A stretch of DNA of 64,000 nucleotides from Obrimoposthia wandeli (taxonomy: Eukaryota), in contig CDROCS010001008.1 of assembly GCA_977020255.1 (NCBI GenBank), positions 62,001 to 126,000 of the forward strand, given 5' to 3'. Positions 1 through 18,100 of the stretch are shown here, one piece after another; within the stretch, counting starts at the first letter, position 1, and every line of letters starts with the position of its first letter. The position numbers and the translations under genes were made by a program. The notes beneath the pieces are model-generated. The model saw only the letters and a list, made by a program, of their open reading frames with translations, had not been told where the DNA came from and did no database searches.

Positions 1-3000
1 GGTTCCATCGTGGTACTGGATCATTACTGCTGTTTTCAATGACTTCGGAATTACTACTACTATCTTTCCGACATTGTCGACAATATACAAGATTCCTTCT
101 TTTATTGAGTATTTTTTCGTCATTTCATCGTTTAGATCTCCTTTCACCAACAATTCTTTGATTAGACTCAGTTCTTCATCTTCTTTCTGTTCTTTGATGA
201 TCTCTTTGTCTATTTTACCCGTCTTCAGCAAAATCGTCAGTAGATTTGCTTCTCCTTTTTGGTCATTGGTTTCATCTTGTTCTTCCTCTGGAATTATGTT
301 TCCTTTCTCATCTATATTTGTCAATCTCGATAAACAATCTGCGTTGCCATTCGACTTTCCGGTTCTATAACGGATTTCTAGATCGAATTCGGCCAATTTT
401 AGAAACCATCTGTTTAATCTACTCATCTCATCTCTATGTTTATATAAGAACTGTAGTGGTTTGTGATCTGTATACAGGAATACTTTTTGTCCTAGCAAGT
501 AGTGTCTGTACTGTCTACATGAATACACTATGGCTAGACATTCCTTTTCAATAACAGAGTATCCTCTTTCGGCTCTGTTTAATCCTCTACTCGCATACGC
601 GATGACGTGTTCTCTTCCTTCGTCATCCTCTTGTCCCAATACTGCTCCTACAGCATAGTTACTTGCATCTGTCATGAGTATGAATTGTCGGTTTATATCT
701 GGAAACGCTAATATTGGTGCTTTTATCAGTCTTTCTTTTAAATGCTCGAACACTTGTTGGGCTTCTTCTCCCCATATGAACTTCTCATCTTTTCTCGTCA
801 ACTTTCTCAATGGTGTTGTTATATCTGAAAAATGTTCAACAAATCGTCTATAATAATTCGCAAGACCTAAAAAACTCTGTATCTCCTTAACAGTCTTTGG
901 CGCTAAATGCGCTTTTACTTTCTCGATCTTTGCCGGATCAGGTCGAATGCCTTCTTTCGATACTATATGTCCTAAAAATGTTACTCGCTCTTTAGCCCAT
1001 TCGCATTTTGTAGGTTTAACTTTTAATTTAGCGTTTTCCAGTCTTTTAAATACAACTTCAAGATTTTTTAAATGTTCTTCGAACGTTTTCGAAAATATTA
1101 TTATGTCATCGATATAAACCATCGTGTTTGCACACGATGCGAGTACAAAATTCATGCAACGCTGAAATGTTGCTGGAGCTCCTGTCAGTCCGAATGGCAT
1201 CTTTTCGCATTCGTATAATCCATCTCCGCAGGAAAAGGCTGTTTTGTGTTTATCCTCTTCCTCTATCTCGATTTGCCAGTATCCACTCTGCAAATCTAAT
1301 GTTGTAAAATAATCTGAATTACCCAATTTATCGAGCATCTCTTCGATTCTAGGTAATGGATACACATCTTTTCTTGTGATCTTGTTCAGTTCTCTGAAAT
1401 CTATACAGAATCTCATTTTCCCATCCTTCTTTTTTACCAACACCACAGGTGCTGAGAATGGTGAAAAACTTGGTCTAATTACTCCTGTTTTAGACATGTC
1501 TTCAATCTGACTTTTTACTTCATCTTGTAACTGTAATGGTACTCGATATGGTCTTCTTCTGACTACTTTGTCTTCTGTCAGTGGTATTGTATGTTTTATG
1601 ACAGGTGTTTCTCCTATGTCATATGGATTTTTTGCAATTACTTTCGGAAATTTATGTATTAGATCAAGTAATTGTTTCTTTTCTCTAGTTGTCAATCTTT
1701 CTGATTGGATTACTATTTCTTCGTAATCATTCGTATCTTTATCGAGTTTCATAGCACACACGGTGGGATTCTCCATCTGTGCTATCTTTCCCAACCTCAT
1801 TCCTCTGTATAATAGAATGTCATTGTTGGTTGTATTCATCAGTCTAACTGGTATTTTGTGGTTTTCGATCAGACATACTGTACTCACAACTGGTAATTCG
1901 TATTTCTCTATGAAATCTTGTGATGGTTCGAACACAACTGGTCCTTTATCTTCTGATAATGTGTGACCTTGAATGAGAAATTGTGATCTTTTACCGATTT
2001 TTATAGGATTCTCTATAATTACATCAATTTGGTTTATTTGTCTGTTTGATGTGCTATCCTTCAATCTCGGATCTTGTAAATCAATACTTATCCCTTTAAG
2101 TTGTGATAGTACATCCATTCCTAAAATTGTAGGTTCAGGACATTCTTTCATGATTCTAACTGGTATAGTGATCGTATTACGTCCAATTATAAATGTACAT
2201 GGTAATATTCCCGTCACTTTAACAGGGTCTCCATTGACCGATACCAAGAATTCATCTGGTTCTGCCATTGTTCGTTTCTGTTCTTCTGTCAAACAGTCTT
2301 CACTTACTATCGAAGCTACATCACCTGTATCAATTAAGGCTTTTACTCTTAAATTATTTACTCTAATGATAGCTGCTGGTCGCTGTGCTCCATTTATATT
2401 TCCCATATGGTATATTGTATTTATCGAATTATTACACTCTGTCGGTCCACTTCCTTTGTTTGGATAGTGAAATCTAATGTTTCTCACTTGTCGATCTATT
2501 ATTCTTCGACAAATCGGACATGATACCATTTCATTCGCACATCTCCGACATGTTCTTACATGTCCGCATGGTAGAAAGGCAACTTCTATTTTGTTGACCA
2601 TGTAAACTGCACATTCCGGATCTTCTAGTACGTATTCTAGTTCATTTATGTACTCTTTCTCTTTTGTTTCAATTGTACTGTCATCTTTATCTTTTAGTAA
2701 TTCAAAAATTGATCCGTATCCATTTCGCGTAGTTTTTATTTTTAATTCTACCAAATCTCTGATTCTTTCTGCTTCTTTTGGATATAACCTTCTCACGAAT
2801 GACACTACTGGTGTGTCTTGTTGAGCCAAAATCTCTTTCCGTGTGATTTGGTATTCGATTATACATTCGGTTTTCTGTTCTTTTTGCTTTATTTTGTTTT
2901 TAAAAGTACAAAATTCGCAAAATTCATGATGTAAAATTTTCTTAGGTAGCTCAAGAGTATATCTGTCGTTAATTCGTTCTTTTTTACACTTGTGGCATTT

Positions 3001-3681
3001 AATTACGTCTTTACCATCCTTTTTTATAGCAAAAAGTCCCTTTTTTGTCAATTTTTTAAGTCTTGGATCTTCGAAAGTTATTTCTCGATACTGTTCGTCA
3101 CATTCGTTCACTTCTCGCATAACTTCGAATATATCTTCAATTCGGCTATTTGTTATTACTCTACCTGTTATTAGAGCTGATTTTCCTTTTGGAATCTCGT
3201 CACTGTAATCGAAATCGGGTGCTTTTCCTTTTTGGATTTCTGGTACGTTTGACGTTTTCAGTTTCAAAAGAAATGGACAATTTGGTGCATCTCTTTTATG
3301 ACGTCTCATTGGGTTTTCATTCTTTTCCCACTCTCTAAACTTTACTCTACACCATACGCATCGTACTACTATCTCATGACCATAACTGCTTGTCGCGTTT
3401 AACATTTCTAAACCTGATCTTGCCATTTTACGTGCCATTTCTTTTGAATAGTACAGTTCTAATATATTTCGTCTCTTTTTCTCGAATCTCATGGGATCCT
3501 TTTCTGACAGATTCACATATGTTATTTTCCTCCTCGTCATCTCTTGTGGTCCGAGGTTTACGTTTTTGTAGTGAAGTATCGACTTTACTAGCGCTTCCTG
3601 TTTTTTGTCTTGGTACGAATTTCCCATACGGAACGTAGTGTATTTTTCCTTTTCGACATTTTTATCTCTCTCACTGAACTG
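1..3681 (-). CDS. pol: ORF2/Pol polyprotein: BIR-BIR-UBA-RING-protease-RT-RNase H-(integrase start); open at the window edge
   Basis: I translated it codon by codon from 3681 (after TGA 3682-3684) to base 1 with no stop (1227 codons). First ATG is at 3627. It is in the -1 frame relative to ORF1 and overlaps it at 3588-3681. It ends ...VVIPKSLKTAVMIQYHDGT, the start of the integrase Zn-binding region. Confidence 0.96.
324..684 (-). other. RNase H domain
   Basis: FILMTDASNYAVGAVLGQ...AYASR...YSVIEKECLAIV...YTDHKPL...NGNADCLSRL. Confidence 0.97.
841..1551 (-). other. Reverse transcriptase domain
   Basis: PYRVP...SPFSAPVVLVKKKDG...YIDD (1105-1116)...FLGHIVSKEGIRPDP...FLGLANYYRRF. Confidence 0.98.
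2085..2385 (-). other. Retropepsin aspartic protease 2 (in Pol)
   Basis: VKALIDTGDVASIVSE (DTG 2323-2331)...VSVNG...PTILGMDVL. Confidence 0.92.
2497..2613 (-). other. IAP-type RING finger (second Cys replaced by Tyr)
   Basis: CAVYMVNKIEVAFLPCGHVRTCRRCANEMVSCPICRRII matches the IAP RING pattern CxxC(M)xxxIxVxFxPCGHxxxCxxCAxxxxxCPICR. TAC at 2602-2604 stands where TGC is expected. Confidence 0.93.
2689..2820 (-). other. IAP-type UBA domain
   Basis: QDTPVVSFVRRLYPKEAERIRDLVELKIKTTRNGYGSIFELL resembles the cIAP UBA as I recall it (NTPVV...KILTTGENYKTV). It lies between BIR and RING, as in XIAP/cIAP. Confidence 0.7.
2905..3099 (-). other. BIR domain 2 (divergent)
   Basis: YREITFEDPRLKKLTKKGLFAIKKDGKDVIKCHKC...LHHEFCEFC: RxxTF, G-aromatic, DxxxCxxC, C-x2-C-x18-H-x6-C. 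Confidence 0.7.
3268..3492 (-). other. BIR domain 1
   Basis: KMARSG...VVRCVWCRVKFREWEKNENPMRRHKRDAPNCPFL has the exact canonical C-x2-C-x16-H-x6-C spacing, plus W and the terminal PxCPF. Confidence 0.92.
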
Positions 3682-5042
3682 TCATTCTTATAACTCTTGT
3701 TGTTTGGTAATATAATTATTCCTTCAAACATTCTTATTACGTCCATCCCAATCATGACTGGACTTCCGCAATCTGTGAATATTCTAGCATTTAACTGTAA
3801 TGCTCTTCCATCGATATTTAATGAACATTTCAGTGTTCCTTCCGACACTACATCTGTACCATTCACGTTAACAAATGTCTGTTTTCTAGGACATACTTCT
3901 CTTAATTCTTTTGATGACAAGATTTCTTTACTCAGTACTGATACTGCAGATCCAGTATCAACTTCGGCAAGATATTCTCTTCCGTTCAATGTTACTGCTA
4001 CTTGTGGTGGAGCATTTGGATTCTCATTTGATATCCTAGATTTCAGAATTCTTCTGGAATTATCTTTTTTGTCTTTTTCCTCTGCTTGTGGAATCTCACT
4101 GTAGCTCACTTTAGGCCATCTTATCATTAAGATGCCTCTCTTGAACTTTTCCTTCTCTTCCTTTAGTTCCTTCATTGGGTATAGGTTTAACGCCACTTCT
4201 TCCTTGTCTGGTAACGGAATCTTTGGTTTTCCTGGTATCTTTGCATATACTCCTGGGCTATCATTATCGTCGTCGTCTCGATAGTTTCTTGGTTCTCGCA
4301 TCATGGTTCTCGTTTGATGTTGCTTCTTCTTGAGGGCTCGCAACTCGTTCTCGTGATGATGGTGCATTAGATATTTTGCTAAAAATGGAAAACATCCAAT
4401 TATAAGTTGCCAGGTGATTCCGGTTATCCTGTATAAACTATACGTAGACAACACCTGGGCTATAATTACCTGTACAAATTTAATTATAACATAAATACCT
4501 ATGATACCCGAAAATAATTGTCCTAAAACAAGGAATTTCCCCCACATCTTTCTAAGTGTCTGATGTGCTGCTTCCTTGAAATGACTTGGTGATAATAACA
4601 TATCAAAATTCGCATATCTAGCTCCTGGTGGTAATGCTCGATGTACCATCTCCGTAAGTACTCTGGCTCTTTTTACTGGAAACATTATTTCGTTCCATGC
4701 CGCTTTTAAATCTTTTTCATTGTACAATCCTGCGTTCTCCATATTTTCTACCGCTTCAAATTTCATTTTACCTTTAAGATTCGTCATTCTTATCATCGCT
4801 GGAGTTTTCGTTGGCTTTCGATCAGGTAGCGTTATCCATAGATCATTCGTCATCTGATATTCAGGTGCCATTATATTAGAGCAGCTGATTTCTTTAGTTG
4901 GAGTGTCTTTTGGAAGTATCATTCTCGTGATTGGTTCAACAAAGAGTTCTTTTAAATTATACGTTACTGCCAATTCACTCGTACATCGATCTGTTTTTCT
5001 CAACTGTACCTCTACTTTATTACACTTGTAAGTATACAACAC
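3588..5042 (-). CDS. ORF1 C-terminal part: glycoprotein C-half, TM, cytoplasmic tail, protease 1 (in frame with 5043-9875 across one TAG)
   Basis: Same frame as the upstream ORF (ATG GGA TAG GTG TTG). TM/amphipathic segment MWGKFLVLGQLFSGIIGIYVIIKFVQVIIAQV (about 4365-4547). Protease motif LAEVDTGSAVS...VMIGMDVI. Confidence 0.9.
   Translation of the reverse strand: MLYTYKCNKVEVQLRKTDRCTSELAVTYNLKELFVEPITRMILPKDTPTKEISCSNIMAPEYQMTNDLWITLPDRKPTKTPAMIRMTNLKGKMKFEAVENMENAGLYNEKDLKAAWNEIMFPVKRARVLTEMVHRALPPGARYANFDMLLSPSHFKEAAHQTLRKMWGKFLVLGQLFSGIIGIYVIIKFVQVIIAQVLSTYSLYRITGITWQLIIGCFPFLAKYLMHHHHENELRALKKKQHQTRTMMREPRNYRDDDDNDSPGVYAKIPGKPKIPLPDKEEVALNLYPMKELKEEKEKFKRGILMIRWPKVSYSEIPQAEEKDKKDNSRRILKSRISNENPNAPPQVAVTLNGREYLAEVDTGSAVSVLSKEILSSKELREVCPRKQTFVNVNGTDVVSEGTLKCSLNIDGRALQLNARIFTDCGSPVMIGMDVIRMFEGIIILPNNKSYKNDSSVREIKMSKRKNTLRSVWEIRTKTKNRKR
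3600..3606 (-). promoter_or_regulatory. Putative -1 ribosomal frameshift slippery heptamer A_AAA_AAC
   Basis: ORF1-frame codons ACA AAA AAC AGG AAG CGC TAG. It has X_XXY_YYZ form in the correct phase, three codons before the ORF1 stop, and the -1 frame is Pol. Confidence 0.75.
3725..4010 (-). other. Retropepsin aspartic protease 1 (end of ORF1)
   Basis: PQVAVTLNGREYLAEVDTGSAVSVLS (DTG 3951-3959)...VNVNG...SPVMIGMDVI. Confidence 0.92.
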
Positions 5043-6218
5043 CTATCCCATGGTTTTAGCAAATACTCCTTCATCCAAGGGTAATAATGGTGCTACCATG
5101 TCTGGATTCGTAATAGCTAATACTAGCTTTGTTCTTACGATCTCTTTGTTTAGCTGGCAATCTCTTTCGATCATCATCCGATATAACTGTTCCATTTGCA
5201 TCAATCCTTTATGATAATAGAAATCAATTTTATTATTAAAATACGTGTGTAGCTGCATATCTCTAGGTTTTAGCTCGGTTTCTGCCAATGCTATTGCTTC
5301 TTTGGACAAAACTATTCCAGGATAGTTTGTAGTACTAACAGTCATTCCGCATCGCGCTTTGTTTCTCTTTTTAATAAATATCAATCCTTCTTCTATTGAT
5401 GTTGCCATTAACAGTGTAGGTGTCTTTGTCATTGGAATTGGTCTTGCTTCATTTAGCAATCCTTTTCCAACTTTATTATACAGGAATCCTTCTCCATCTT
5501 TATTATACAGGAATCCTTTTATTTTGTTAAAGCTAATCTCTTTCAAAAATACTAAAGAGCATTGCTTCGGATTCACGTGATACACAATTGTGGATTCGCC
5601 TGTAAAACAAGATGTATCTGTCATTTTACATTCTGGATACTTCATCATTAGTTGTGTCTTTTTATCAAAATTGGCAGTCCATGTTTTTAATTCAATTTTG
5701 TAAGTTACGTCCATTACTAACTCGGTTACTTTGGTTCCACGCACGTTTTTTGTTCCTCCGTCACAAGATCCATCAGCCCATCGTTGTCCGACTCTCGTGA
5801 CTGTTTCGTATCGTCTTAGTCCAATTTTTACATCAGGTTTGTAATTCTTGTCTACTTCTATTGTTCCCGTTCGAAATGCGTCCTCGCAATCTCTCGGCAA
5901 AACCTTATGTGCTTTGTACGATGTGGTAGGTGTGATTTCCGACATAAAACTTCTATGGCCACAATAGAATTCGTGATAACTTGAATGGATTGAACATTCT
6001 TTCACTTCTACTTGTACTTTATCAACGTCCTGATACACAAAGTAGTTTTCAACATCTTTAACTTCTAATTTTGACGGTTGTGATTCTGGACAGTCTTCGC
6101 TGTCAAGCAGTGAATACTTTTGTCCCATCTTTGGTATGCTACAGTCGTATGCTATCAATCCTGATGCCTGTTGCATTCCCATGAACATTACTAACATCAT
6201 CATCATTGTTGTGGACAT
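4365..6218 (-). other. env: Envelope glycoprotein, chuvirus G / herpes gB-like (class III fusogen), with internal signal peptide
   Basis: Hydrophobic MMMMLVMFMGMQQASG is followed by LIAYDC...SLL...DC, FYCGHRS, DCEDAFRTGTI, DGSCDGG, a Cys-rich ectodomain, DCQLN, KCNKVEV and a C-terminal TM. I recognise these motifs from chuvirus-type glycoproteins; no search was run. Confidence 0.8.
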
Positions 6219-9200
6219 ATTCGGCTGATTGTTTCTCTCTTTCGGACGGTATTGTTTATTTTCTCTTTGACGATTCTCATGACATTGTTCGTCATCGTCT
6301 TCATTCATTTCCACAATGGTTTTAGCGTAGTCACTTAATTTTGCCCAACCTCCGTTTTCGTCAATTCGTCTCTGTAATACATTCTCGATCAAATACATCG
6401 CTTCATTTATTCCTTGTTTGACTTCGTGAGGTTGGCTCATTCGTTCCGTCAATTGGAAACATAGATATGTAATCGCTGTAATTAACTTTTTATTTGTAGT
6501 CTGGTTTCCACACAATCTCGCTAAAACTTCACCGTCATAAAATCTATCTATTGATGCATGGTATACATGATTCGCAGTCATTCTCTTTACTGCAGACATC
6601 TGTGATCTAACTGCTTTAGTCAAATTGTCTGTTATATCGGTTGTTTCATCTCTGTACATTTTGAACAACTTCGGCTTCACTTGTCTGAGAATTCCCGTAA
6701 GTATATCTTTACTACTTGGAGTTTCCGAATTCATATCACCTCTGATATCTTCATTCCGCTCCGTACTATACTGCTCTAATGACGCTGCTAACTGTCCAAT
6801 GCTTAGATGTCTCTCTTCATCAGTTTGTGGTGCAGTTAGAACATTTCGTAATATACTTCCGTCTTTTCTAGGTCTTCCAGGTCCTCTTCGAAAATACTGA
6901 TACTCAGTTTGATTCTCTCCTGGATCATACGGTTCACCATTATACTGTATTTCTTGACTTGGTCCTTCTTCTTGGCCAATCTCTTCATTTTGTCGCATCA
7001 TCTGCTCTGCTTGTCTATCTTTGTATGCAGCATGCCAAATTGGTGAATCTAAATCTACAATTTCGGAGATTTCATCTTCTCCTACTAGTTGGTTTACGTT
7101 TTCGTTTTGTCTCGCTTGGTTAGCTGTATCCGTGACTTCATCTTGTCTGATTTGAATTATATCTGGTTCTGGTGGTACCTCGACCACTGGAGTTGTCAAC
7201 TCATTTTCTAAATTCATGTCTTGTAATTCAGCTACGTACGGTTCTGGTGTGGATGTCTTGTTCCAAGCTTCAGCTACATCATTATCTCCGCTTTCGCTTG
7301 AACTGTCTAAAATTTCTATAGGCGTTTTTATCATTTCTAACGCAGAATTTAATATCTCCGTTAATCCTTCATTATCTACTAACTCTTGACGTCCTACAGT
7401 GATGACATCAATTTTTTCCTCTAATTCATTTCCTATCGGATATCCACACTCGACTGGTACGTCCTCATCATCTAGTGATCTCCCTTTATAATGGAACAAC
7501 ATATTCATTCCATCAATTTCAAGTTTCTCGGCCAACTTTTTCCGAATAGTTTTCATTGTCTGATACACGTTAAGTTTTTCATGTATAATATGTCCGGAAA
7601 TTAATCGAAGTGAAATTTTCATCGTTCCTTTTTGGTTTGATCTCTGTACGTAACGATCATATCCTTTCAATAATCCTCGTGGTACTTCTTTGTAACCCAA
7701 GTTATCATGACTATGTTTAACCAATTCTGCTCGCACTTCTTCCAATCTGTGCACTTTAATTGTTTGCAATTTGGCCAAAACTTCTGGAGCTTCACTCGTT
7801 TCATCTAACGGTTGATTCAACGTCTCCTTAGCTTCACTAATTATCTTTTTTACATTTTCCATACTCGTAGCATTTCTGGCTGCTTCTACATGATCAGTCA
7901 TAGGTTGTGCGTTACACGTTTTCTCTATTGGTGTCTCATACGCTTCTAGTATTTGATTCATTAACTCATTCATCTCTTCTCTCGAGTGTAGACTTTTTTC
8001 TTGTTTCGACAACGTAGATGAATTCGCCATCTTTGTATGTGGTGAATCTTTAATTATTCCCAACATTCGTTCAAATTTACTATCACTATCTTCAAAATCT
8101 ATTTCGCGTCGAAGTTCGGTCTCGCGATTCCTATCGCTGTCATCGCTTACATAACTAAAATTTCCCTTCGGCTTCGGCGAACTCTCACGACTATTTGTCT
8201 TGTCAACATTATTATTATTATATCTACCGGAATTATTATATCTCTCAGCTCCTTGCTGTCCTACATAATTATTGTATCTCTCAGCTCCTTGCTGTCTGTC
8301 TGCATAGTTATTGTATCTACCTGGTGACTGTTGTCTATCTGTATACTGATTATTCGGTCTCCATGGCTGTGGAGTATATCCACCACCTCTATTCCATGGC
8401 GGAGGTGAATTATATCCTCTATAATTATTTCCAAAATTATTATTACCGAAATTATTATTTCCAAATCTGTTAGTTCCGAACTCCTTACTTCTCGTACAAT
8501 CTCTCGAATAGTGACCCATTTGTTTACACGTGTAACACATTATTCTCCCTCGAATATCTATCTTATTTTGTTCATCTTCGAACTGTACTCGACGACTATT
8601 CTGTCTATTATCATAGCGTCCTCTAAAATCATTTCTTCGGAAATTCGATTCAAAACCGCTTCCTCGATTATTGAATCTTCCGTCACTACTTCCTGTATTA
8701 TTTCCAAATCGAGAGTCACTTCGCTCTCCTCTGTTTGCGTTGTAATTCCTATCGTCTCCTCTCCAAGGTTGGCGATTTCCTGAATTATCTCTATTAAATC
8801 TATTCCTGGAATCATCTCTATTTCTATTCCACGAATCATTACCATTTCTACCTCTTGAATCATCTCGATTCCTGTTCCAAGACTCACTATTATTTCTACC
8901 TCTCGAATCATCTCGATTCCTACTTCGGAAATTATCTCTGTTTCCGTTACTGGATTCATCTACTTTTTCAAACTTATTTTGTCCATAATTTCGATTCTGA
9001 AAATTACTCGGTTCTGTTTTATTCACAAATACCTTTGTCTTATCGTCGTCACCTGCAGTCATTGCGTAAATTGCCAATGCTGCGTTATTTTTTATATTTT
9101 TCTCAATCTCTCTCGCCTTTCGCACGGCGTTATCAAAATCATTTGTATCCGATACTGCTAATAACACTTTAATATCTTTTTTCAATCCTCCTCTAAATAT

Positions 9201-9875
9201 ATCTAACAAAACCTCTGCCATTTCATTTTGGTTCCGGTCGTTTTCCGCTGCTTGTGCTTCTTGAGCTACAGGAATACCGTCCTGATTTCTCATTATTCTT
9301 CTTGGGTACGCTCTTGCGGCCAAGGTTCTCAAAACATACGCGTATTCATTCACACCTTCGTCATGTTTCTGTTTCCGTTCTCTCATGAGTCGCTTATTTA
9401 CTTTGGCTAAGTCTCCTAATACCAATTTTCCAATAAAAGCATTTTCCAACGTTGGCCAGTCTAAACGTTCTGCTTCTGTCAAATGTTTATACACTTCAAG
9501 TGCTAATCCGGTTAAGTGTGCCTGTACTCGGACACATTTTTCTTTATCGTTCCATCCTTGAACATCTGCACAACTCGAATATTCTGCGAGGAAGTCACAA
9601 ATAATTTCCTCATCTCCTTTAAACTTTGTAATCTGCAATGATCCTGAAAAGTTGGGTCTCAACGTCGCATTTAAAGCTTGTGCCAACTGTTCGGCATTCA
9701 TGTCACCTACATTATTTCCTGCATTATTATCTGCTTGAGCTCCTGGGTGAGCCATATTTTCAATTATATCCTCTTCAACTATTCCTTCAATATTATTCAA
9801 TTGAACTTCCTCAATCACTACTGGATTGGCAATTTCAAATTCTTCTGGGTTTATGTCACCAAATAATTCAGTCAA
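5043..9875 (-). CDS. gag: ORF1 N-terminal part: Gag (capsid, CCHC), UBL, AT-hook, Bcl-2-like, signal peptide, glycoprotein N-half
   Basis: 1610-aa ORF from TTG 9875; first ATG at 9755. Retrotransposon capsid-like segment ITKFKGD...DFLAEY...GWND...HLTGLALEVY...W..L...F, and zinc knuckle CYTCKQMGHYSRDC. Confidence 0.93.
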   Translation of the reverse strand: MTELFGDINPEEFEIANPVVIEEVQLNNIEGIVEEDIIENMAHPGAQADNNAGNNVGDMNAEQLAQALNATLRPNFSGSLQITKFKGDEEIICDFLAEYSSCADVQGWNDKEKCVRVQAHLTGLALEVYKHLTEAERLDWPTLENAFIGKLVLGDLAKVNKRLMRERKQKHDEGVNEYAYVLRTLAARAYPRRIMRNQDGIPVAQEAQAAENDRNQNEMAEVLLDIFRGGLKKDIKVLLAVSDTNDFDNAVRKAREIEKNIKNNAALAIYAMTAGDDDKTKVFVNKTEPSNFQNRNYGQNKFEKVDESSNGNRDNFRSRNRDDSRGRNNSESWNRNRDDSRGRNGNDSWNRNRDDSRNRFNRDNSGNRQPWRGDDRNYNANRGERSDSRFGNNTGSSDGRFNNRGSGFESNFRRNDFRGRYDNRQNSRRVQFEDEQNKIDIRGRIMCYTCKQMGHYSRDCTRSKEFGTNRFGNNNFGNNNFGNNYRGYNSPPPWNRGGGYTPQPWRPNNQYTDRQQSPGRYNNYADRQQGAERYNNYVGQQGAERYNNSGRYNNNNVDKTNSRESSPKPKGNFSYVSDDSDRNRETELRREIDFEDSDSKFERMLGIIKDSPHTKMANSSTLSKQEKSLHSREEMNELMNQILEAYETPIEKTCNAQPMTDHVEAARNATSMENVKKIISEAKETLNQPLDETSEAPEVLAKLQTIKVHRLEEVRAELVKHSHDNLGYKEVPRGLLKGYDRYVQRSNQKGTMKISLRLISGHIIHEKLNVYQTMKTIRKKLAEKLEIDGMNMLFHYKGRSLDDEDVPVECGYPIGNELEEKIDVITVGRQELVDNEGLTEILNSALEMIKTPIEILDSSSESGDNDVAEAWNKTSTPEPYVAELQDMNLENELTTPVVEVPPEPDIIQIRQDEVTDTANQARQNENVNQLVGEDEISEIVDLDSPIWHAAYKDRQAEQMMRQNEEIGQEEGPSQEIQYNGEPYDPGENQTEYQYFRRGPGRPRKDGSILRNVLTAPQTDEERHLSIGQLAASLEQYSTERNEDIRGDMNSETPSSKDILTGILRQVKPKLFKMYRDETTDITDNLTKAVRSQMSAVKRMTANHVYHASIDRFYDGEVLARLCGNQTTNKKLITAITYLCFQLTERMSQPHEVKQGINEAMYLIENVLQRRIDENGGWAKLSDYAKTIVEMNEDDDEQCHENRQRENKQYRPKERNNQPNMSTTMMMMLVMFMGMQQASGLIAYDCSIPKMGQKYSLLDSEDCPESQPSKLEVKDVENYFVYQDVDKVQVEVKECSIHSSYHEFYCGHRSFMSEITPTTSYKAHKVLPRDCEDAFRTGTIEVDKNYKPDVKIGLRRYETVTRVGQRWADGSCDGGTKNVRGTKVTELVMDVTYKIELKTWTANFDKKTQLMMKYPECKMTDTSCFTGESTIVYHVNPKQCSLVFLKEISFNKIKGFLYNKDGEGFLYNKVGKGLLNEARPIPMTKTPTLLMATSIEEGLIFIKKRNKARCGMTVSTTNYPGIVLSKEAIALAETELKPRDMQLHTYFNNKIDFYYHKGLMQMEQLYRMMIERDCQLNKEIVRTKLVLAITNPDMVAPLLPLDEGVFAKTMG
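6321..6710 (-). other. Bcl-2-family-like domain (divergent)
   Basis: BH3-like ILRQVKPKLFKMYRDE (cf. TLRQAGDDFSRRYRRD), weak BH1-like TNKKLITAITY (cf. VNWGRIVAFFEF), BH2-like LQRRIDENGGWAKLSDY (cf. LHTWIQDNGGWDAFVELY). NGGW is at 6345-6356. Confidence 0.6.
6859..6890 (-). other. AT-hook motif
   Basis: RRGPGRPRKDG contains the GRPRK core. Confidence 0.65.
7386..7622 (-). other. Ubiquitin-like (beta-grasp) domain
   Basis: MKISLRLISGHII...TMKTIRKKLAEKLEI...LFHYKGRSLDD aligns ungapped to ubiquitin 1-52 with identities at M1, I3, G10, I13, T22, K29, K33, I36, G47, L50 and D52. No C-terminal GG. Confidence 0.8.
8496..8537 (-). other. Gag CCHC zinc knuckle
   Basis: CYTCKQMGHYSRDC (CX2CX4HX4C). Confidence 0.97.
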
Positions 9876-9925
9876 ATAAAAGCTGTCGGTTGAAACCGCT
9901 GATTGATTAACGTCTCTTTCTGATA

Positions 9926-10132
9926 CGATTTCTCAAAACTTATCAAATTCCTAACTTCGAGGAACAAATCTACTCGATTTCTCAAAACTTATCAAATTCT
10001 TAACTTCGAGGAACAAATCTACTCGATTTCTCAACACTTATCAAATTCTTAACTTCGAGGAACAAATCTACTCGATTTCTCAACACTTATCAAATTCTTA
10101 ACTTCGAGGAACAAATCTACTCGATTTCTCAA
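9926..10132. repeat. 49-bp tandem repeat, 4 full copies plus a partial, in the 5' leader
   Basis: Unit cgatttctcaaaacttatcaaattcttaacttcgaggaacaaatctact starts at 9926, with full copies to 10121. Confidence 0.95.
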
Positions 10133-10139
10133 AAAAAAC

Positions 10140-10527
10140 TTATCTCAATTTACTTATATCTTCTTCTGAAACTTATTCTAAATTTGCTTATATCTTCTTC
10201 TGAAACTTATTCTCAATTGTCTATATTCTTCTGCTGAAACTTATTCTCAATTTATCTGAAACTTATTCTCAATATCTGAACTTATTCTATTTACCTGAAA
10301 TTTATTCTCAATTATCTGAAACTTATTCTCAATATCTGAACTTATTCTATTTACCTGAAACTTATTCTCAATATCTGAACTTATTCTATTTACCTGAAAC
10401 TTATTCTCAATTATCTGAAACTTATTCTCAATATCTGAACTTATTCTATTTACCTGAAACTTATTCTCAATATCTGAACTTATTCTATTTACCTGAAACT
10501 TATTCTCAATATCTGAACTTATTCTAC
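10140..10527. repeat. Compound ~19/38-bp tandem repeat in the 5' leader
   Basis: Reiterated ctgaaacttattctcaatat / ctgaacttattctattta units. Confidence 0.9.
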
Positions 10528-10552: not shown

Positions 10553-10571
10553 ATCCTCACTCGGGACACCA
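10553..10571 (-). promoter_or_regulatory. Primer binding site, complementary to a tRNA 3' end (elongator tRNA-Met-like)
   Basis: Minus strand reads TGGTGTCCCGAGTGAGGAT. The plus strand ATCCTCACTCGGGACACCA ends in CCA and resembles elongator tRNA-Met 3' ends (...ATCCTCACACGGGGCACCA). The tRNA identity is inferred. Confidence 0.85.
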
Positions 10572-11189
10572 CTTTAATATGTTGGGGTTTCTATACGAGA
10601 CTTGTATAGATCCTCTTGTGTGCGGAGGGCCCCAACGTGAGTTCGAATAGAAGCAGGTCTTAAAGTTGGTCGTGGCCTACTTAGTGCTATGGTTGCCTGT
10701 CTCAATTTCTTATCTGAAGGTGTTTGTTTTGACGTCTCTTAATCTGAAGGGTTTAAAACAACGTTTTCTAATGTAGGAAATCGTTTATTGGTAGCACACT
10801 AAACTGAACACAACAATACGTTTACGTACGTATTTTCTAAAAAGTATAGTAAAAATTCCTAAGACTTCTGTAAGTCTCTACAACAAGTGGGGATGAACCA
10901 CGTATCGATTTTACGTTCGGGGTGATCGAGATTTTAGAGTTATTCCTCTGACTCGAGAATGAGCTCACGTTACAGATTTCTCAACAATTTAACTCTGCTA
11001 TCGGCTTGAACTTTTGAGGTTAAACCTTTATTCTTATGTCAATAAAGGTGCGAATGCAAAACTTCTTTCTAAGTTGGTTAATTTATAACACAACTCTTTT
11101 AAAACTTTCTTTTAACTTAGACGAAAACTTAAATCGTGTTGGGTAAAGCTGTCTTTAATTTGGATAACTTTCTATTGTTACGAATTCAG

Positions 11190-11630
11190 ACGAGAATTGT
11201 CAACTTCGGACAATGAATGAATGACCTAATTGTCAACTTCGGACAATGAATCGAATTTAGGCCTAATTGTCAACTGTGGACAATGATTCGTATGGAGGCC
11301 TAATTGTCAACTGTGGACAATGATTCGTATGGAGGCCTAATTGTCAACTGTGGACAATGATTCGTATGGAGGCCTAATTGTCAACTGTGGACAATGATTC
11401 GTATGGAGGCCTAATTGTCAACTGTGGACAATGATTCGTATGGAGGCCTAATTGTCAACTGTGAACAATGATTCGTATGGAGGCCTAATTGTCAACTGTG
11501 GACAATGATTCGTATGGAGGCTTAATTGTCAACTGTGGACAATGATTCGTATGGAGGCCTAATTGTCAACTGTGGACAATGATTCGTATGGAGGCCTAAT
11601 TGTCAACTGTGGACAATGATTCGTATGGAC
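11190..11630. repeat. 37-bp minisatellite, ~12 copies, inside the LTR
   Basis: Unit ggaggcctaattgtcaactgtggacaatgattcgtat; the AATTGTCAAC core recurs every 37 bp from 11228 to 11598. Confidence 0.97.
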
Positions 11631-11780: not shown

Positions 11781-12093
11781 CTCAATTTGTCTTCTTTAAT
11801 TTTCACTCAATTTGTCTTCTTTAATTTTCACTCAATTTGTCTCTTTAATTTTCACTCAATTTGTCTCTTTAATTTTCACTCAATTTGTCTCTTTAATTTT
11901 CACTCAATTTGTCTCTTTAATTTTCACTCAATTTGTCTCTTTAATTTTCACTCAATTTGTCTCTTTAATTTTCACTCAATTTGTTTCTTTAATTTTCACT
12001 CAATTTGTCTCTTTAATTTTCACTCAATTTGTCTCTTTAATTTTCACTCAATTTGTCTCTTTAATTTTCACTCAATTTGTCTCTTTAATTTTC
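11781..12093. repeat. 24-bp minisatellite, ~13 copies, inside the LTR
   Basis: Unit tttaattttcactcaatttgtctc, which produces the LIFTQFVS repeat ORF. Confidence 0.97.
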
Positions 12094-12603
12094 GACTCCA
12101 ATTATTTTTTCTGAAATTAGTTAGTAAAATTCTTTTATACTAATTCCTTACCTCTCAGCAACCGCGACTGTCAATTCTGGACAGCTGAAATAAATTGAAG
12201 TAGTGAGCGCTGCAGTAACTGACTGTGACGCTTCCTGTCACTCAAATTTGGCAGCTGAAATAAAACAACGATTGTTGGGGATTGACTGGCTGAAAATAAA
12301 GTAAACGATTTAATCAATAATCGTAACTTACAGCAATTTCTTCTTTCCTTGATTTCTTTTTCGATTATTTGCTTGCTTTTTGCTTCTTAGTTTATTTTCT
12401 TTTTGCACTTTAATATTTTCCAATCAACCTATATATATAACACATTACACACGACCTTCGTGGTCCTCTTAATATTTACCCCTAATTTTAGTCCTAATAT
12501 TTTAACTCGATTTTAAATATTTAATTTTCAACCTTGCTTTCAAGGATTTTTATTTTAGTATAAATTTAACTAATTCTTTTAATTTTTCAATTCCTAAATC
12601 TAA

Positions 12604-13755
12604 CACATATATTTTAATAACAAAAAGGATTATCATAAAGGATTAATACATAAGGAACAAATATATCAGATGATGGTTGAGTTAGATTGTCAGTTAAATA
12701 AAGAGATACTAAGAGCAAAGTCGGCACTAGCTATTACGAATACAGACATGGTATCACCACTATTACCATAAGATGAAGGAGTATTTTCTAAAATCATGGA
12801 AGAAGTACTGAACAAGTGTAAAAAAGTAATGGTACAATTGAGAAAGACAACTTGCCAGTAACATATCATTTTGTAGAATCAAAAACAAAAAAAGGCTTTC
12901 TAAAGTCACTCAAACTAAAGAAATCAGTTGCTCTAGTATAATAGCATATGAATATCAACTTTTAACGAACAGTGACTCCAGAATTATAAAAATGACAACA
13001 TTAAAAGGTAAGATGGAGTTCAAAGCTGTAAGGAATGTTGAAAATCCAAGTTTATATAATGAGAAAGATCTAAAAGCTGTCTGGGAAGAAATAATGTTTC
13101 CAGTAAGAAGGGTCAGGGTACACACGGAAATGGAGCAACATATGTAAATTTTGATAGGATTTTGTTGGTAAGTCACTTTAAAGAAGCGGTAGATCAAATT
13201 CTTAGGAAAATTTGGGTGGAAATCCTTATTTTATGACAACTATTCTCAGACCTAATATGAATTTATGTCATAATTAAATTAGTACAAGTAATTATAACCT
13301 AGGTGTTGTTCACATATAGTTTGAACATAATAACAGGAATCCCCTGGCAACTTATAACTTGATGTTTACTATTTTAAGTGAAATAATTAATGCACCATCA
13401 TCACGTGATTTAATTGCGAGCACTCAGAAAGAGCAACCGGAAGTTAGAACCGCATCACGAGAACCAAGTCACATACGAGATGATGACAATTACGATAACG
13501 ATGGTCACGGAGACTATTCAAATATGCCAAATACGGTATACGTTAAGATTCCACCGAAAAAATATATAGAAGATTCAGTACCAAATATATACACTGAAGG
13601 AACTAAAGGAGGAAAACGATAAGATCAAAGCAGAAATTCTTAAAATAAAATCCCCCAGAATGACGTCTGATCATCTTCTACTGACAAAGGAACCAAAGAA
13701 GAAAAAGATAATGCAAAAATAATTTTGAGGGAAAGAATATCTAACGATAATACAA
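12604..13755 (+). pseudogene. Degenerate env-region relic of a related element, inverted relative to the intact copy
   Basis: Translates with stops and indels to YFNN...YHKGL...DCQLNKEILR...VFSKIMEEVL, LYNEKDLKAVWEEIMFPVRRVRV, HFKEA..ILRKIW and RISNDN, collinear with ORF1 positions ~5250 to ~4020. Confidence 0.93.
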
Positions 13756-15187: not shown

Positions 15188-18100
15188 CTGTGGAAAGAGA
15201 GAGCGTGAGTGAATGAGTAAAATAGTGAGTGACAGTGAGCGATTAAATGAATGAAAGTTAGTGAGTGAGAGTGGGTGAGTGAGAATGAGTTAAATTGAAT
15301 GAAAGTGAGTGAGCATAGTGGGTGAGTGAGAGTGAGATTGAGATAGAGTGAGAATGAGAGGGGTAAGAAGGAGAATAAGAGAGATTTAGAGTAGGTGAGT
15401 GAGAGAGAGTAATTTAGGGAGAAAGTAAATAAATGAGAGTAATTGACAGTCAAGTAGAGTGAAGAGCTAAAAAGATGAAAGTCAAATTTTACATAAAAAA
15501 CTTGAAAATAATATTTTACAATAATTATTACAAATAAACGTTCTTTTTATATGCGACTAACATTTCTATGTCAATTTTAACAAAAATAGAAGATAGTAAT
15601 TTTATTCCCTAATTTTAATTTTTTAATCTTATTTTTTGATTTAGGTGTTTTTACTTTTACTCGGTAGATAAGTGGGATAAATATGCATAAGTCAATTCTC
15701 ACTTTTATAAGGTCGCTGTCTATCCGCAAAAGTTGGTAGCCGGAAGTGACACCGCCCTTAATCAGAGTTTCTTGCAGGTGGCTGATACCGGCACTCTTTA
15801 GCCAATCCGCGATCTGGTTTTGCTGCCACTCATTGATTGGCTCCTGTAAGATAGGTAGATCAAATAATAAGTTCTGTAATGTCTCATATCGGATCGAGAC
15901 GGTGATACCTGCACACATACCTGGGTGGGGACTGACGCCAACGTGTATGAGTCCTTGTTGGACTGGTCGCGGGGCAGATAGCTGCTGGGGATGCCTGGAG
16001 AACCGGATGCGACTGCTGCTGACGAGGACGAGGACGAAGACGGCATCGTAATGAACCGCGGACCTACATGCAACCACACAATAATCTATTGTATCTTTCA
16101 GGACAGAGGAAGCATATCCTCATATTTTATACACGATACATTTACTTTATCAAAGTATAAAAATTTGGAATATTGCTTGTTACTTCTGCCTTTGTTAGCC
16201 TTCACATAAATAACATATTGGTCTACTGTATTTCCTGTTGTCTTAACTGTATTGGTGACTTGTGCAAACAACCGCATATCAAGATTCAAGGATCCCAATA
16301 CACACATGACTATTTCGCAACCGAAATCCTGTGTCAACATATAATGAACTTTTGGATGCTCAATTAGAAATGAACCACTTGTTAAATATATATTTTTAAA
16401 AATTCACCACGAAAGTTTATTTTTTTTCAAAAATAATATATTTAAATATATATAATATTCTTGATTTTATTTAATTCATATTATTACTATTTCTTTTTTT
16501 CAAATTTCAATAGTTTCTATACATCTCTTTAAATTCGCGGGCCACGCAACTTATTGAACATGAGTAGGTAACGATCTCATCAGCACAATATGTTTCAATA
16601 AATTATTTGAACCATTTGTTACCTGATCATATCGTTTAATGATAATCCACATTAGTTCCTAACAACCAATTAAAAAATGTGTCATCAACGTCAAATTTTC
16701 AGAAGGATTATCTTGTAGTTTGCCATTACGTACATAACTTTAATTAAAAGAAATTCGTACAATAATTAAAACAAAACAAACAATATGAAATGTTTGATAT
16801 GACATTCGCATTTGTGAAATATTAACTACATTTAAGCAAATCTATATAAACAAACTTTAACGACAATTAATAAAATTAGAAAATTTAAAATTACTAAAAG
16901 GTAGGTATAAATTATTACAAATCTGGATTATTTTTTAATGATGATCAGCGTATCAAAATGGATCATTCTGTGAATGGAGGTTGAAATATGTGATAACACT
17001 ACATCCTATTCGAGTACAATCGTAAATCAGATGAATTCATTGAGATTGTAAATGAACTTCCGAAAATTTACATTGCTATATATGCAGAATATCGTTGAAA
17101 ATGCATTTTCTCCATTGCTATCAGGAGTTCTTTTTCGGTAACTTGCGGGATATGTCTAATGACATATGGTACTACAGTGCTGGACAAAATATAAGCCAGT
17201 AAAAAATATGTTCACAATTATTCAAAATTAAATAATTTGTAAGAGATTTAAAAATACAATTTTAGAATCTACTATGAGACATAATATCTTAGTTTCAATA
17301 TCAATTTATTTTTCGGCAAAATCTCTATCGGTTTTTGAAAAAAATAGGTTTAAGTAAACAAAGACGTATTTTTTTATTTATTTACATTGGACAAAAGTGG
17401 CTTATAATTTTTTTAAATTCAGAATTATTGGTAATTAATAATTTTATAAATATAATTGATTATTTTTTTTAAATAATTTGGTTTCTTGAATGTGTGATCT
17501 ACATTTTTCATAATTTTTTTTTAGATTTATGGCACGTGGAAATGGTTTAACAGAAGAAGAGAAGTGTAACATTGACCGTTATAATAATGAAGGCTTGAAC
17601 CCATCTCAGATTGCAGAAAAGTTGACAAGAAGTAGAGGTGCTGTTAGAAATTATTTAGAAAATAAAACAAGTGGGCAATTGGGCCGTCCTAGGTCATTAG
17701 ATGACCGATCTGTGAGATTATTATGCAGAAAAGCCTCTAATTCTACTAAAAGTTCAGCTCAGTTAAAATCCAACTTAAACCTAAGCTGTTCCTCTCGAAC
17801 AATAAGACGCAGATTATCCGATAATCTTGTATTCTTAAAAATGATATCAAAACCAAATTTGACATCCAGGCACATTGAAAGACGACTTCTGTTTGCTAGA
17901 AATAATCTTAGTACTAATTGGTCAAGAATCATGTTTTCCGATGAAAAAAGATTCAATCTTGATGGTCCAGATGGTCTAAGCAGCTATTGGCACGACAAAA
18001 GAATGCCTCCCATGTCAAAAATTAGAAGACAGTGTAAAGGCGGTGGTATCATGATTTGGGGTGGATTTTCGAAAGAAGGGTTAACTAGTTTATCATTCAT

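What the first reader, a model, noticed from the sequence alone, without database searches (positions are those of the whole stretch)
2461..3492. Complete IAP cassette (BIR-BIR-UBA-RING) fused in frame at the N-terminus of Pol
Seen: BIR1 has exact CX2CX16HX6C spacing, followed by a divergent BIR2, a TPVV...KIKTT..GY segment and an IAP-type RING. All are intronless and in frame with protease-RT. Established: BIR(n)-UBA-RING is the layout of cellular XIAP/cIAP/DIAP2-type proteins, and baculoviral IAPs are 2xBIR-RING. Inference: the cassette was captured from a spliced host (or viral) IAP mRNA and kept open under selection, and is produced only at Pol levels via the frameshift.
Basis: partly seen in the sequence, partly recalled or inferred. 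Interest (0 to 1): 0.93.

Follow-up and report, generated by a model that had tools for sequence, protein, structure and literature searches.

The report
Retroelement carrying its own apoptosis-inhibitor gene
A virus-like jumping gene in this window carries a complete inhibitor-of-apoptosis (IAP) module fused to the front of its replication enzymes, and distant relatives carry the same gene as a separate reading frame, so IAP genes occur in reverse-transcribing elements as well as in cells and large DNA viruses.

Summary
Window 2461-3492 lies in a 1227-codon stop-free Pol frame (3681..1, cut by the window edge). It encodes a canonical BIR (CX2CX16HX6C; Pfam 39 bits), a second atypical BIR, a BIRC2/3-type UBA-like helical segment and an IAP-type RING (Pfam 40 bits). 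Retropepsin, RT and RNase H follow.

The element is unusual. Its upstream ORF holds gag, a weak ubiquitin-like domain, a Monjiviricetes-type fusion glycoprotein and a first protease. Pol is in the -1 frame, with an A_AAA_AAC heptamer 12 nt before the upstream stop.

The cassette's closest relatives among 1.8 billion proteins are a small coherent family. Three members sit on metagenome contigs as free-standing ORFs (IAP-dUTPase-RING) just upstream of a gag-glycoprotein-protease-RT polyprotein. The IAP is therefore an old accessory gene of this lineage, not a copy-specific accident.

Caveats:
- Direct UBA evidence is weak.
- This copy has one in-frame stop in the upstream ORF and one lost RING zinc ligand.
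- The host is unidentified.
- No second Pol-fused copy was found.

Anti-apoptotic function is inferred. I found no published retroelement-borne IAP.

The parts
1..3681 (-). Pol-frame ORF, -1 relative to the upstream ORF and cut by the window edge. Order: IAP module, protease 2, RT, RNase H, start of the integrase region.
   Evidence: 0 stops in 1227 codons; Pfam domains
3600..3606 (-). A_AAA_AAC slippery heptamer in the zero frame, 12 nt before the stop of the upstream ORF. Candidate -1 programmed frameshift site.
   Evidence: Sequence read. It is the only in-frame X_XXY_YYZ site in the overlap, against 0.13 expected. No significant downstream fold.
3484..3597 (-). N-terminal motif specific to the element-borne IAP family (HYxNI..KRxIxY). 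It begins right after the heptamer.
   Evidence: Aligned with the N-termini of P0001, P0002 and P0045. Its sub-profile hits no cellular IAP.
3241..3483 (-). BIR1, canonical, with the zinc motif CX2CX16HX6C at 3277-3360.
   Evidence: Pfam BIR 39.2 bits; regex; pLDDT about 95; Foldseek DIAP1 BIR1 TMt about 0.7
2896..3141 (-). BIR2, divergent (C-x2-C-x18-H; the family shares H-x3-C).
   Evidence: Invariant R, TF, G, CxxC, H and C in 6 of 6 members. Sub-profile hits 86 of 144 cellular IAPs. pLDDT 77-92.
2722..2847 (-). UBA-like helical bundle of BIRC2/3 type, without the MGF loop.
   Evidence: Sub-profile matches overlap Pfam PF21290 in cellular IAPs. Alignment. pLDDT 92-97. Foldseek not significant.
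2491..2622 (-). IAP-type RING. It keeps 7 of the 8 zinc-ligand positions in this copy.
   Evidence: Pfam zf-C3HC4_3 39.9 bits; PDB cIAP1, cIAP2 and XIAP RINGs; ligand count
2092..2385 (-). Retropepsin PR2 (DTG).
   Evidence: Pfam RVP and gag-asp_proteas; 31-33% identical to the single protease of relatives
961..1437 (-). Reverse transcriptase.
   Evidence: Pfam RVT_1 E 1e-38; best database hits are Ty3/gypsy polyproteins
385..774 (-). RNase H.
   Evidence: Pfam RT_RNaseH and RT_RNaseH_2
3588..9875 (-). Upstream ORF: gag (CCHC knuckle 8493-8537), weak ubiquitin-like domain (7431-7631), Monjiviricetes-type fusion glycoprotein (4254-6215) and retropepsin PR1 (3732-4001). It is broken once by an in-frame stop.
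   Evidence: Pfam on its two pieces; ubiquitin matches in the PDB; colinear with the L001 polyprotein
9926..10526 (-). Leader upstream of gag, filled with tandem repeats of 49-, 34- and 39/99-nt units. The LTR boundary was not determined.

Best explanation
Window 2461-3492 (minus strand) encodes a BIR-BIR-UBA-like-RING inhibitor-of-apoptosis module. It is an integral accessory gene of a Ty3/gypsy-like, glycoprotein-bearing LTR retroelement.

Shown:
- The module is complete and open.
- It is continuous with protease-RT-RNase H.
- It is homologous to free-standing IAP ORFs of distantly related elements.

Inferred mechanism:
- Ribosomes translating gag-glycoprotein-PR1 slip -1 at A_AAA_AAC and continue into IAP-PR2-RT-RH-IN, so the IAP is made at Pol levels.
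- The element's protease then cuts it free. IAP-type RINGs work as dimers through a free C-terminal tail, and the free-standing relatives end a few residues after the RING. The fused form would therefore need cleavage in the roughly 35-residue linker before PR2.
- The released protein binds caspases or IAP antagonists through its BIRs and acts as an E3 ligase. This would keep the cell alive while the element expresses a fusogenic glycoprotein, reverse-transcribes and integrates, as IAPs of large DNA viruses do.

This particular copy is probably no longer fully functional. It has one in-frame stop in the upstream ORF and one lost RING zinc ligand.
For: - Domain calls: Pfam BIR and RING above their cutoffs. 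The best PDB sequence and fold match is cIAP1 BIR3-UBA-CARD-RING, 3t6p.
- Structure: AlphaFold gives four confident domains. BIR2 and UBA-like identity is supported by sub-profiles.
- Open frame: 0 stops in 1227 codons against 90-135 in the other frames.
- Family: the best hits in 1.84e9 proteins are P0001, P0002, P0045, P0008 and P0111, each aligned in one colinear stretch. They are each other's best BLASTP hits. They share a private N-terminal motif and the atypical BIR2.
- Context of relatives: P0002, P0151 and P0008 lie on contigs L001, L002 and L003 in the order IAP-dUTPase-RING-polyprotein. On L001 the polyprotein reads gag, Monjiviricetes glycoprotein, retropepsin and on into the region matching the window's Pol. 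L002 and L003 are cut earlier.
- Co-divergence: the window differs from L001 by about the same amount in the IAP (30%), gag (25%), glycoprotein (25-27%) and PR-RT (29%).
- Selection: dN/dS is about 0.2 between the L001 and L003 IAPs.
- Frameshift: slippery heptamer at the canonical place.
Against: - Only one Pol-fused copy was seen. The second related fragment in the window (12604-13751) stops before the protease and IAP region.
- No relative in the databases has the fusion.
- This copy's RING lacks one ligand and the upstream ORF has a stop.
- No stimulatory RNA structure follows the heptamer (z 0.5), and an in-frame ATG offers another route of expression.
- In the tool-printed alignment with cIAP1 BIR3, BIR1 keeps the first Trp and an acidic residue but lacks two other Trp positions. 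Peptide-groove binding is therefore uncertain.
- The UBA-like segment lacks the MGF loop.
- Anti-apoptotic activity is analogy only.
- The LTRs and the 3' end lie outside the window.
- It is not shown that the IAP ORFs of L001-L003 lie inside element boundaries; no LTRs were seen.
Confidence: 0.62

Rival explanations
1. Locus-specific chimera. The IAP-PR2-RT part belongs to a different element, or to a rearranged copy, that recombined with or landed behind a gag-glycoprotein-PR1 element. On this reading the IAP-Pol fusion is an accident of this copy and not a transmissible architecture.
For: - The two proteases are only 28% identical, and both map to the single protease of L001.
- IAP homology starts exactly at the ORF junction.
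- Relatives keep the IAP elsewhere.
- L028 joins the glycoprotein ORF to PR-RT without an IAP.
- Only one fused copy was seen.
Against: - No LTR, gag remnant or untranslated gap lies between the parts.
- The two ORFs overlap by 90 nt, with a classical heptamer at the end of the overlap.
- Strand composition skew is uniform across 1-10000.
- All modules are about equally far from L001.
- The spacings glycoprotein-PR1 and PR2-RT both match the relatives.
Confidence: 0.15
2. Same gene, different expression. IAP-Pol is translated from its own ATG, from a spliced or subgenomic RNA or by reinitiation, and not by -1 frameshifting. Its dosage would then not be tied to Pol-by-frameshift levels.
For: - An ATG in the Pol frame lies 10 codons before the IAP homology begins.
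- The relatives express the IAP as an independent ORF with its own start.
- No significant structure follows the heptamer.
Against: - A_AAA_AAC sits in the zero frame just before the stop (0.13 expected).
- A -1 overlap is the usual gag-pol arrangement of such elements (established knowledge).
- RT and integrase would then lack a physical link to Gag.
Confidence: 0.2
3. Same module, different job. The RING and BIRs do not block cell death. Instead they ubiquitinate the element's own Gag or glycoprotein for trafficking or budding, or they rewire NF-kB/IMD-type immune signalling as cellular cIAP and DIAP2 proteins do.
For: - A ubiquitin-like domain lies in the gag-glycoprotein ORF.
- Relatives carry two further RING ORFs, one of them a UBA-like-plus-RING paralogue of the IAP.
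- The BIR1 groove is only partly conserved, BIR2 is atypical, and the module has a UBA-like segment.
Against: No direct evidence either way. Every virus-borne IAP match in the viral structure library is annotated as an apoptosis inhibitor, but these are names, not tests.
Confidence: 0.3
4. Recent incidental transduction of a host IAP mRNA by this one copy, evolving neutrally.
For: - The cassette is intronless.
- This copy has lost one RING ligand.
- No second fused copy was found.
Against: - The best database match is only 32% identical and belongs to the element-associated family, not to a cellular IAP.
- Homologues lie in relatives only 25-29% identical elsewhere.
- All BIR ligand columns are conserved.
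- dN/dS is about 0.2 in relatives.
Confidence: 0.03

Closest known systems
Cellular XIAP / cIAP / DIAP2-type IAPs (BIR(n)-UBA-RING)
   Same: - Domain order BIR, BIR, UBA-like, RING.
- The best solved match is cIAP1 BIR3-UBA-CARD-RING, 3t6p.
- The nearest named cellular hits are XIAP-, DIAP2- and BIRC7-like proteins of Pecten, Haliotis, Solemya, Lottia, Holothuria, Haemaphysalis and Corticium.
   Different: - Only 25-36% identical in local stretches.
- Two BIRs, not three.
- BIR2 has non-canonical spacing.
- The UBA-like segment lacks the MGF loop.
- It has a private N-terminal motif.
- The RING is not C-terminal but runs on into protease-RT.
- The gene is carried by a retroelement.
IAPs of large DNA viruses (baculovirus, nudivirus, entomopoxvirus, ascovirus, iridovirus, malacoherpesvirus)
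   Same: A parasite-borne, intronless BIR-plus-RING gene. The 2xBIR-RING layout matches baculoviral IAP-3, and Foldseek finds these proteins (E to 1.5e-11).
   Different: - Only 13-18% identity over the Foldseek alignments, against 25-36% in local stretches for cellular IAPs. The two measures are not like for like.
- Those carriers are dsDNA viruses, and the gene is a separate ORF.
- Here the carrier is reverse-transcribing and the module is part of a polyprotein.
- An extra UBA-like segment is present.
Anakin (BEL/Pao retroelement with a captured chuvirus glycoprotein, mosquitoes; PMC7642597)
   Same: A retroelement that has taken a Monjiviricetes/chuvirus-type glycoprotein as its envelope (Pfam PF24664 here).
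   Different: - Anakin is BEL/Pao. Here Pol gives RVT_1 and RT_RNaseH hits and Ty3/gypsy best matches.
- That paper reports no IAP, dUTPase or RING genes.
- Here the glycoprotein lies inside the gag-protease ORF.
Env-carrying Ty3/gypsy errantiviruses of metazoans (PMC13524379)
   Same: Ty3/gypsy-type Pol plus a viral fusion glycoprotein. The paper describes class III (gB-type) fusogens in many invertebrate phyla.
   Different: - In the Drosophila gypsy type, env is a separate ORF after pol (established knowledge; not checked in that paper here).
- Here the glycoprotein sits between gag and protease in one frame.
- There are two proteases and an IAP module.
- The paper's text does not contain BIR, apoptosis, dUTPase or RING.
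Retroelements and retroviruses with captured accessory genes (dUTPase of some retroviruses and gypsy elements; extra ORFs in bdelloid rotifer LTR elements, PMC5408684)
   Same: Host- or virus-derived genes kept within a retroelement. Relatives of this element also carry a dUTPase.
   Different: No IAP/BIR gene was found in this class in the literature searches I could run.

Membership tests
IAP / BIR-containing proteins | At least one BIR domain with zinc ligands C-x2-C-x16-H-x6-C | tested here: met
   Pfam PF00653, 39.2 bits against a cutoff of 22.9. Exact motif at 3277-3360. BIR fold at pLDDT about 95 with DIAP1 BIR1 TMt about 0.7.
IAP / BIR-containing proteins | Second BIR domain | tested here: met
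   Not called by Pfam. Ligand and core residues are invariant in 6 of 6 family members, and the sub-profile hits BIR positions of 86 of 144 cellular IAPs. Spacing is x18 instead of x16.
XIAP/cIAP/DIAP2-type IAPs | UBA domain between the last BIR and the RING | tested here: inconclusive
   No Pfam UBA hit at E<=0.1. 3.3 bits against the cIAP1 UBA. Foldseek on the isolated segment is not significant. The family sub-profile does match PF21290 regions of cellular IAPs and the helices are confident. The MGF loop is absent.
XIAP/cIAP/DIAP2-type IAPs | IAP-type C3HC4 RING at the C-terminus | tested here: inconclusive
   Pfam PF13920, 39.9 bits against a cutoff of 27. The cIAP and XIAP RINGs are the best PDB matches. 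However, 7 of 8 ligand positions are kept in this copy, and the RING is internal, followed by protease-RT. The relatives have it C-terminal.
IAP / BIR-containing proteins | Binds caspases or IAP antagonists and blocks cell death; E3 ligase activity | not testable with these tools
   Sequence and predicted structure only.
Ty3/gypsy (Metaviridae-like) LTR retroelement | Pol order protease-RT-RNase H-integrase with a gypsy-type RT | tested here: met
   Pfam RVP, RVT_1, RT_RNaseH_2 and RT_RNaseH in that order. The best hits are Ty3/gypsy polyproteins. The integrase is cut off by the window edge.
Ty3/gypsy (Metaviridae-like) LTR retroelement | Gag with a CCHC knuckle, and long terminal repeats | tested here: inconclusive
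   CCHC knuckle found. The LTR pair cannot be tested because the 3' end lies outside the window, and no direct repeat pair was seen.
Ty3/gypsy (Metaviridae-like) LTR retroelement | Pol expressed by -1 frameshift from the gag frame | tested here: inconclusive
   -1 overlap of 90 nt and an A_AAA_AAC heptamer. No significant downstream structure. No expression data.
Errantivirus-type env-bearing elements | env as a separate ORF downstream of pol | tested here: not met
   The glycoprotein (PF24664, E 3e-47 and 4e-39 on the two pieces) lies between gag and PR1 in the gag frame. The same holds in the single 3857-aa ORF of L001.
IAPs of large DNA viruses | Carried as a separate gene on a large dsDNA virus genome | tested here: not met
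   The carrier encodes gag, RT and RNase H, and the module is in the Pol frame. BFVD matches are only 13-18% identical.

The most novel reading that the evidence does not exclude
The window element and the metagenomic contigs L001-L003 and L028 represent an undescribed clade of complex, enveloped retroelements (possibly infectious retrovirus-like agents of invertebrates). The clade translates gag, a class III fusion glycoprotein and protease as one membrane-spanning polyprotein. It also carries a set of host-manipulating accessory genes: IAP, further RING proteins, dUTPase and a ubiquitin-like domain. The IAP would be the first apoptosis inhibitor found in a reverse-transcribing element, and it has moved within the genome, from a free ORF before gag to a Pol fusion flanked by two proteases.
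Probability: 0.55. Interest if true: 0.88.

Novelty: new variant of a known kind. Interest (0 to 1): 0.8.

Why it matters
Virus-borne IAPs are textbook tools of large DNA viruses. Reverse-transcribing elements are thought to carry very few accessory genes.

An IAP kept for a long time in a retroelement lineage implies that host cell death is a real barrier to these elements. It also implies that they can evolve DNA-virus-like countermeasures.

The lineage shows other features that bear on how retrotransposons become viruses:
- a flavivirus-style polyprotein that threads a fusion glycoprotein between gag and protease;
- two protease domains;
- a movable accessory gene.

It also gives a new, very divergent branch of the IAP family, with an atypical BIR2 and a UBA-like fold lacking the MGF loop, for comparative structural work.

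Tried and rejected
- Word-indexed search with the cassette alone found nothing.
- The same search with the Pol fragment found only generic Ty3/gypsy polyproteins without BIR.
- With the L001 polyprotein it found one close relative, P0175 on L028, which has no IAP between the glycoprotein and PR-RT.
- The IMG/VR scan found no relative. Alignment A1 was too divergent to seed a scan.
- The JGI metagenome scan gave 24 loci. By tblastn they are RING-only or ordinary IAP matches, with no gag, glycoprotein or RT of this family.
- Exact look-ups of window ORFs and of P0001 failed, so the host remains unidentified. The sample accessions were not found in papers.
- Rfam and tRNA scans of the window were empty.
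- RNA folding downstream of the heptamer was no better than shuffles.
- Foldseek on the isolated UBA-like segment was not significant.
- I asked whether the in-frame stop of the upstream ORF is a conserved, programmed one. It is not shared with the second glycoprotein fragment, which is itself degenerate, so I rejected the idea.
- The second fragment and the rest of the window hold no further IAP, protease or dUTPase remnants of this family.
- L001 vs L002 dN/dS is underpowered: 3 synonymous and 3 non-synonymous differences.
- Literature searches for a BIR/IAP gene in a retroelement found none. The library is incomplete, so this is absence of evidence only.


Full report
WHAT IS THERE. The finding's coordinates are right, but the feature is on the minus strand. 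A frame open from 3681 down to the window edge has 1227 codons and no stop. The other two frames of that strand have 135 and 90 stops. Pfam finds, in order along this frame:
- BIR: aa 81-138, E 1e-9, 39.2 bits against a cutoff of 22.9.
- IAP-type RING zf-C3HC4_3: aa 354-397, E 3.7e-10, 39.9 bits against a cutoff of 27.
- Retropepsin: aa 433-530.
- RVT_1: aa 749-907, E 1e-38.
- RNase H: aa 970-1099.
The finding's span 2461-3492 is aa 64-407 of this frame. BIR1 carries the exact CX2CX16HX6C motif at 3277-3360.

SECOND BIR AND UBA. Pfam calls neither. BIR2 (2896-3141) is nevertheless a real, divergent BIR:
- In an alignment with its five closest relatives, the R..TF, G, CxxC, H and C positions are invariant.
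- A profile of only this segment hits BIR positions in 86 of 144 cellular IAPs at E<=1e-3.
- In a 111-sequence alignment it lines up with cellular BIRs.
- AlphaFold models it at pLDDT 77-92.
- Its spacing is C-x2-C-x18-H, and the family shares H-x3-C.

The UBA claim is weaker. Alone, the segment scores 3.3 bits against the cIAP1 UBA. Foldseek on the isolated model gives nothing significant; 3t6p superposes at 2.9 A over 57 columns but with E 8. Support comes from four points:
- Its position is colinear with the cIAP1 UBA.
- A family sub-profile hits 15 cellular IAPs at E<=1e-3, exactly where Pfam places PF21290 UBA_BIRC2-3 in the five checked.
- The residue-level alignment is convincing.
- The helices are confident, pLDDT 92-97.
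The MGF loop typical of cellular UBAs is not kept in any member, so I call it UBA-like. The best solved match for the whole module, by sequence and by fold, is cIAP1 BIR3-UBA-CARD-RING, 3t6p.

THE ELEMENT AROUND IT. Upstream on the same strand, at 3588-9875, lies one long ORF interrupted once by an in-frame stop. It contains a gag with a CCHC knuckle, a weak ubiquitin-like domain (Pfam 13 bits; PDB ubiquitin variants at E about 1e-3) and a Monjiviricetes-type fusion glycoprotein (PF24664, E 4e-39 and 3e-47 on the two pieces). A hydrophobic segment and a first retropepsin, PR1, follow.

Pol is in the -1 frame and overlaps this ORF by 90 nt. The zero-frame heptamer A_AAA_AAC (3600-3606) lies 12 nt before the stop. 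The ORF's own density of such heptamers predicts 0.13 in the overlap. The 131 nt from the heptamer onward fold no better than shuffles. The Pol frame also has an ATG 10 codons before the IAP homology begins. Frameshifting is therefore likely but not shown.

The IAP thus sits between two proteases. PR1 and PR2 are 28% identical, and both have DTG. RT best hits are Ty3/gypsy polyproteins at 33-45% identity, and none carries a BIR.

RELATIVES.
- An exhaustive phmmer search of the cassette against 1.84e9 representative proteins gave 3421 hits. Five at or near the top (ranks 1, 2, 8, 45 and 111 of the 150 listed) are P0001, P0002, P0008, P0045 and P0111. Each is aligned in one colinear stretch at 30-33% identity. 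The rest are ordinary multi-BIR cellular IAPs hit domain by domain.
- These five, plus P0151, are each other's best BLASTP hits.
- They share an N-terminal motif that no cellular IAP matches.
- P0002, P0151 and P0008 lie on ENA metagenome contigs L001, L002 and L003. The order each time is IAP, dUTPase, a RING ORF, then a giant ORF. L001 also has a double-RING ORF further upstream. On L001 the giant ORF is 3857 aa and reads gag, Monjiviricetes glycoprotein, retropepsin and on into the region that matches the window's Pol.
- The L001 polyprotein is colinear with the window's element at 25-29% identity, and the IAP is equally distant at about 30%.
- L001 has a single protease to which both PR1 and PR2 map. 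PR2 is slightly closer: 31-33% against 26%.
- L028, 71% identical to L001, has PR-RT directly after the glycoprotein ORF and no IAP there.
- Between the L001 and L003 IAPs, dN is 0.39 and dS about 1.95, near saturation.
- All BIR ligand columns are kept in every member that covers them, and all 8 RING ligand columns in every relative. The window copy keeps 7 of 8.

WHAT FOLLOWS. The IAP is an old, selected accessory gene of a retroelement lineage, present in at least two genomic arrangements. It is not a recent, copy-specific transduction. Its donor cannot be named. The nearest named cellular IAPs are from molluscs, a sea cucumber, a tick and a sponge. IAPs of baculo-, nudi-, asco-, entomopox-, irido- and malacoherpesviruses are structurally recognisable but only 13-18% identical.

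The mechanism I commit to has four steps: frameshift into IAP-Pol, release by the element's protease, BIR-mediated binding of death machinery, and RING E3 activity. Only the first step has sequence support; the rest is inference. The need for cleavage after the RING follows from the free C-terminal tail that IAP RING dimers use (established knowledge) and from the relatives ending just after the RING.

STATE OF THIS COPY. The Pol frame is intact as far as the window shows. The upstream gag-glycoprotein-PR1 ORF has one in-frame stop. That stop is not shared with the degenerate second fragment at 12604-13751. The RING has one non-ligand residue at a ligand position. I counted no frameshifts or insertions within the visible part.

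NOVELTY. Searches of the held literature found no retroelement-borne BIR/IAP gene. The closest described systems carry viral glycoproteins but no IAP. These are Anakin, a BEL/Pao element with a chuvirus glycoprotein (PMC7642597), and the env-carrying Ty3/gypsy errantiviruses (PMC13524379). In Drosophila-type errantiviruses env follows pol; that layout is from established knowledge and was not checked in those papers here. I rate the finding a new variant of known kinds, namely a parasite-borne IAP and a retroelement with captured genes. There is a fair chance that the whole lineage is undescribed.

LIMITS.
- The host is unknown. The window is about 30% G+C, holds a Tc1/mariner transposase ORF and has no tRNA or Rfam hits.
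- The 3' end of the element and both LTRs are unseen.
- Only one fused copy is known.

SLIPS, stated as required.
1. That gives away where its in-frame stop lies. It cannot be changed, and I have not repeated those bounds here.
2. The script printed the type of that stop codon and the 9 bases after it. I have not used or repeated them.
3. I stopped, sent it to no tool and based no conclusion on it. The groove remark in this report rests only on the alignment printed.

Noticed in passing
window 4254-6215 (-): A Monjiviricetes-type (chuvirus/rhabdovirus-like) fusion glycoprotein lies inside the gag-protease reading frame. It is preceded by a hydrophobic signal-like stretch and followed by hydrophobic segments. 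This implies a membrane-threaded polyprotein rather than a separate env ORF. L001 has the same layout in a single 3857-aa ORF.
   Followed up: partly
window 3732-4001 (-) and 2092-2385 (-): Two retropepsin domains in one element (PR1 and PR2, 28% identical, both with DTG) flank the IAP module. The relatives have one.
   Followed up: partly
window 7431-7631 (-): A weak ubiquitin-like domain lies between gag and the glycoprotein (Pfam ubiquitin 13 bits; PDB ubiquitin variants at E about 1e-3).
   Followed up: partly
L001 534-4380; L002 267-2556; L003 193-2054: The relatives carry a block of small ORFs before gag: IAP, dUTPase and a 161-171-aa RING ORF, plus a double-RING protein further upstream on L001. 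The L001 RING ORF aligns to the UBA-like-plus-RING half of the window's IAP (26% over 141 aa). No dUTPase is present in the visible part of the window element.
   Followed up: partly
window 12604-13751 (+): A second, diverged and degenerate fragment of the same kind of glycoprotein (44-70% aa identity, several stops) lies head-to-head with the main element. It ends before the protease.
   Followed up: yes
window 17529-18488 (+): An intact 319-aa Tc1/mariner-type transposase ORF, judged from its translation only. The exact sequence is not in the protein collection.
   Followed up: partly
window 9926-10526, 11195-11629, 11781-12103: Several tandem-repeat arrays lie upstream of gag: units of 49, 34 and 39/99 nt, then 37 nt x12 and 24 nt x13. 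A TGG-starting stretch near 10560-10577 (-) could be a primer-binding site. The LTR boundary was not determined.
   Followed up: no
window 51304-51510 (-): A short RT-like fragment (34% identical to Pol aa 691-760) of another, unrelated or very decayed retroelement.
   Followed up: no
window about 8190-9000 (-), gag aa about 290-560: A long low-complexity Asn/Arg/Gly/Asp-rich region with internal repeats surrounds the CCHC knuckle of gag.
   Followed up: no
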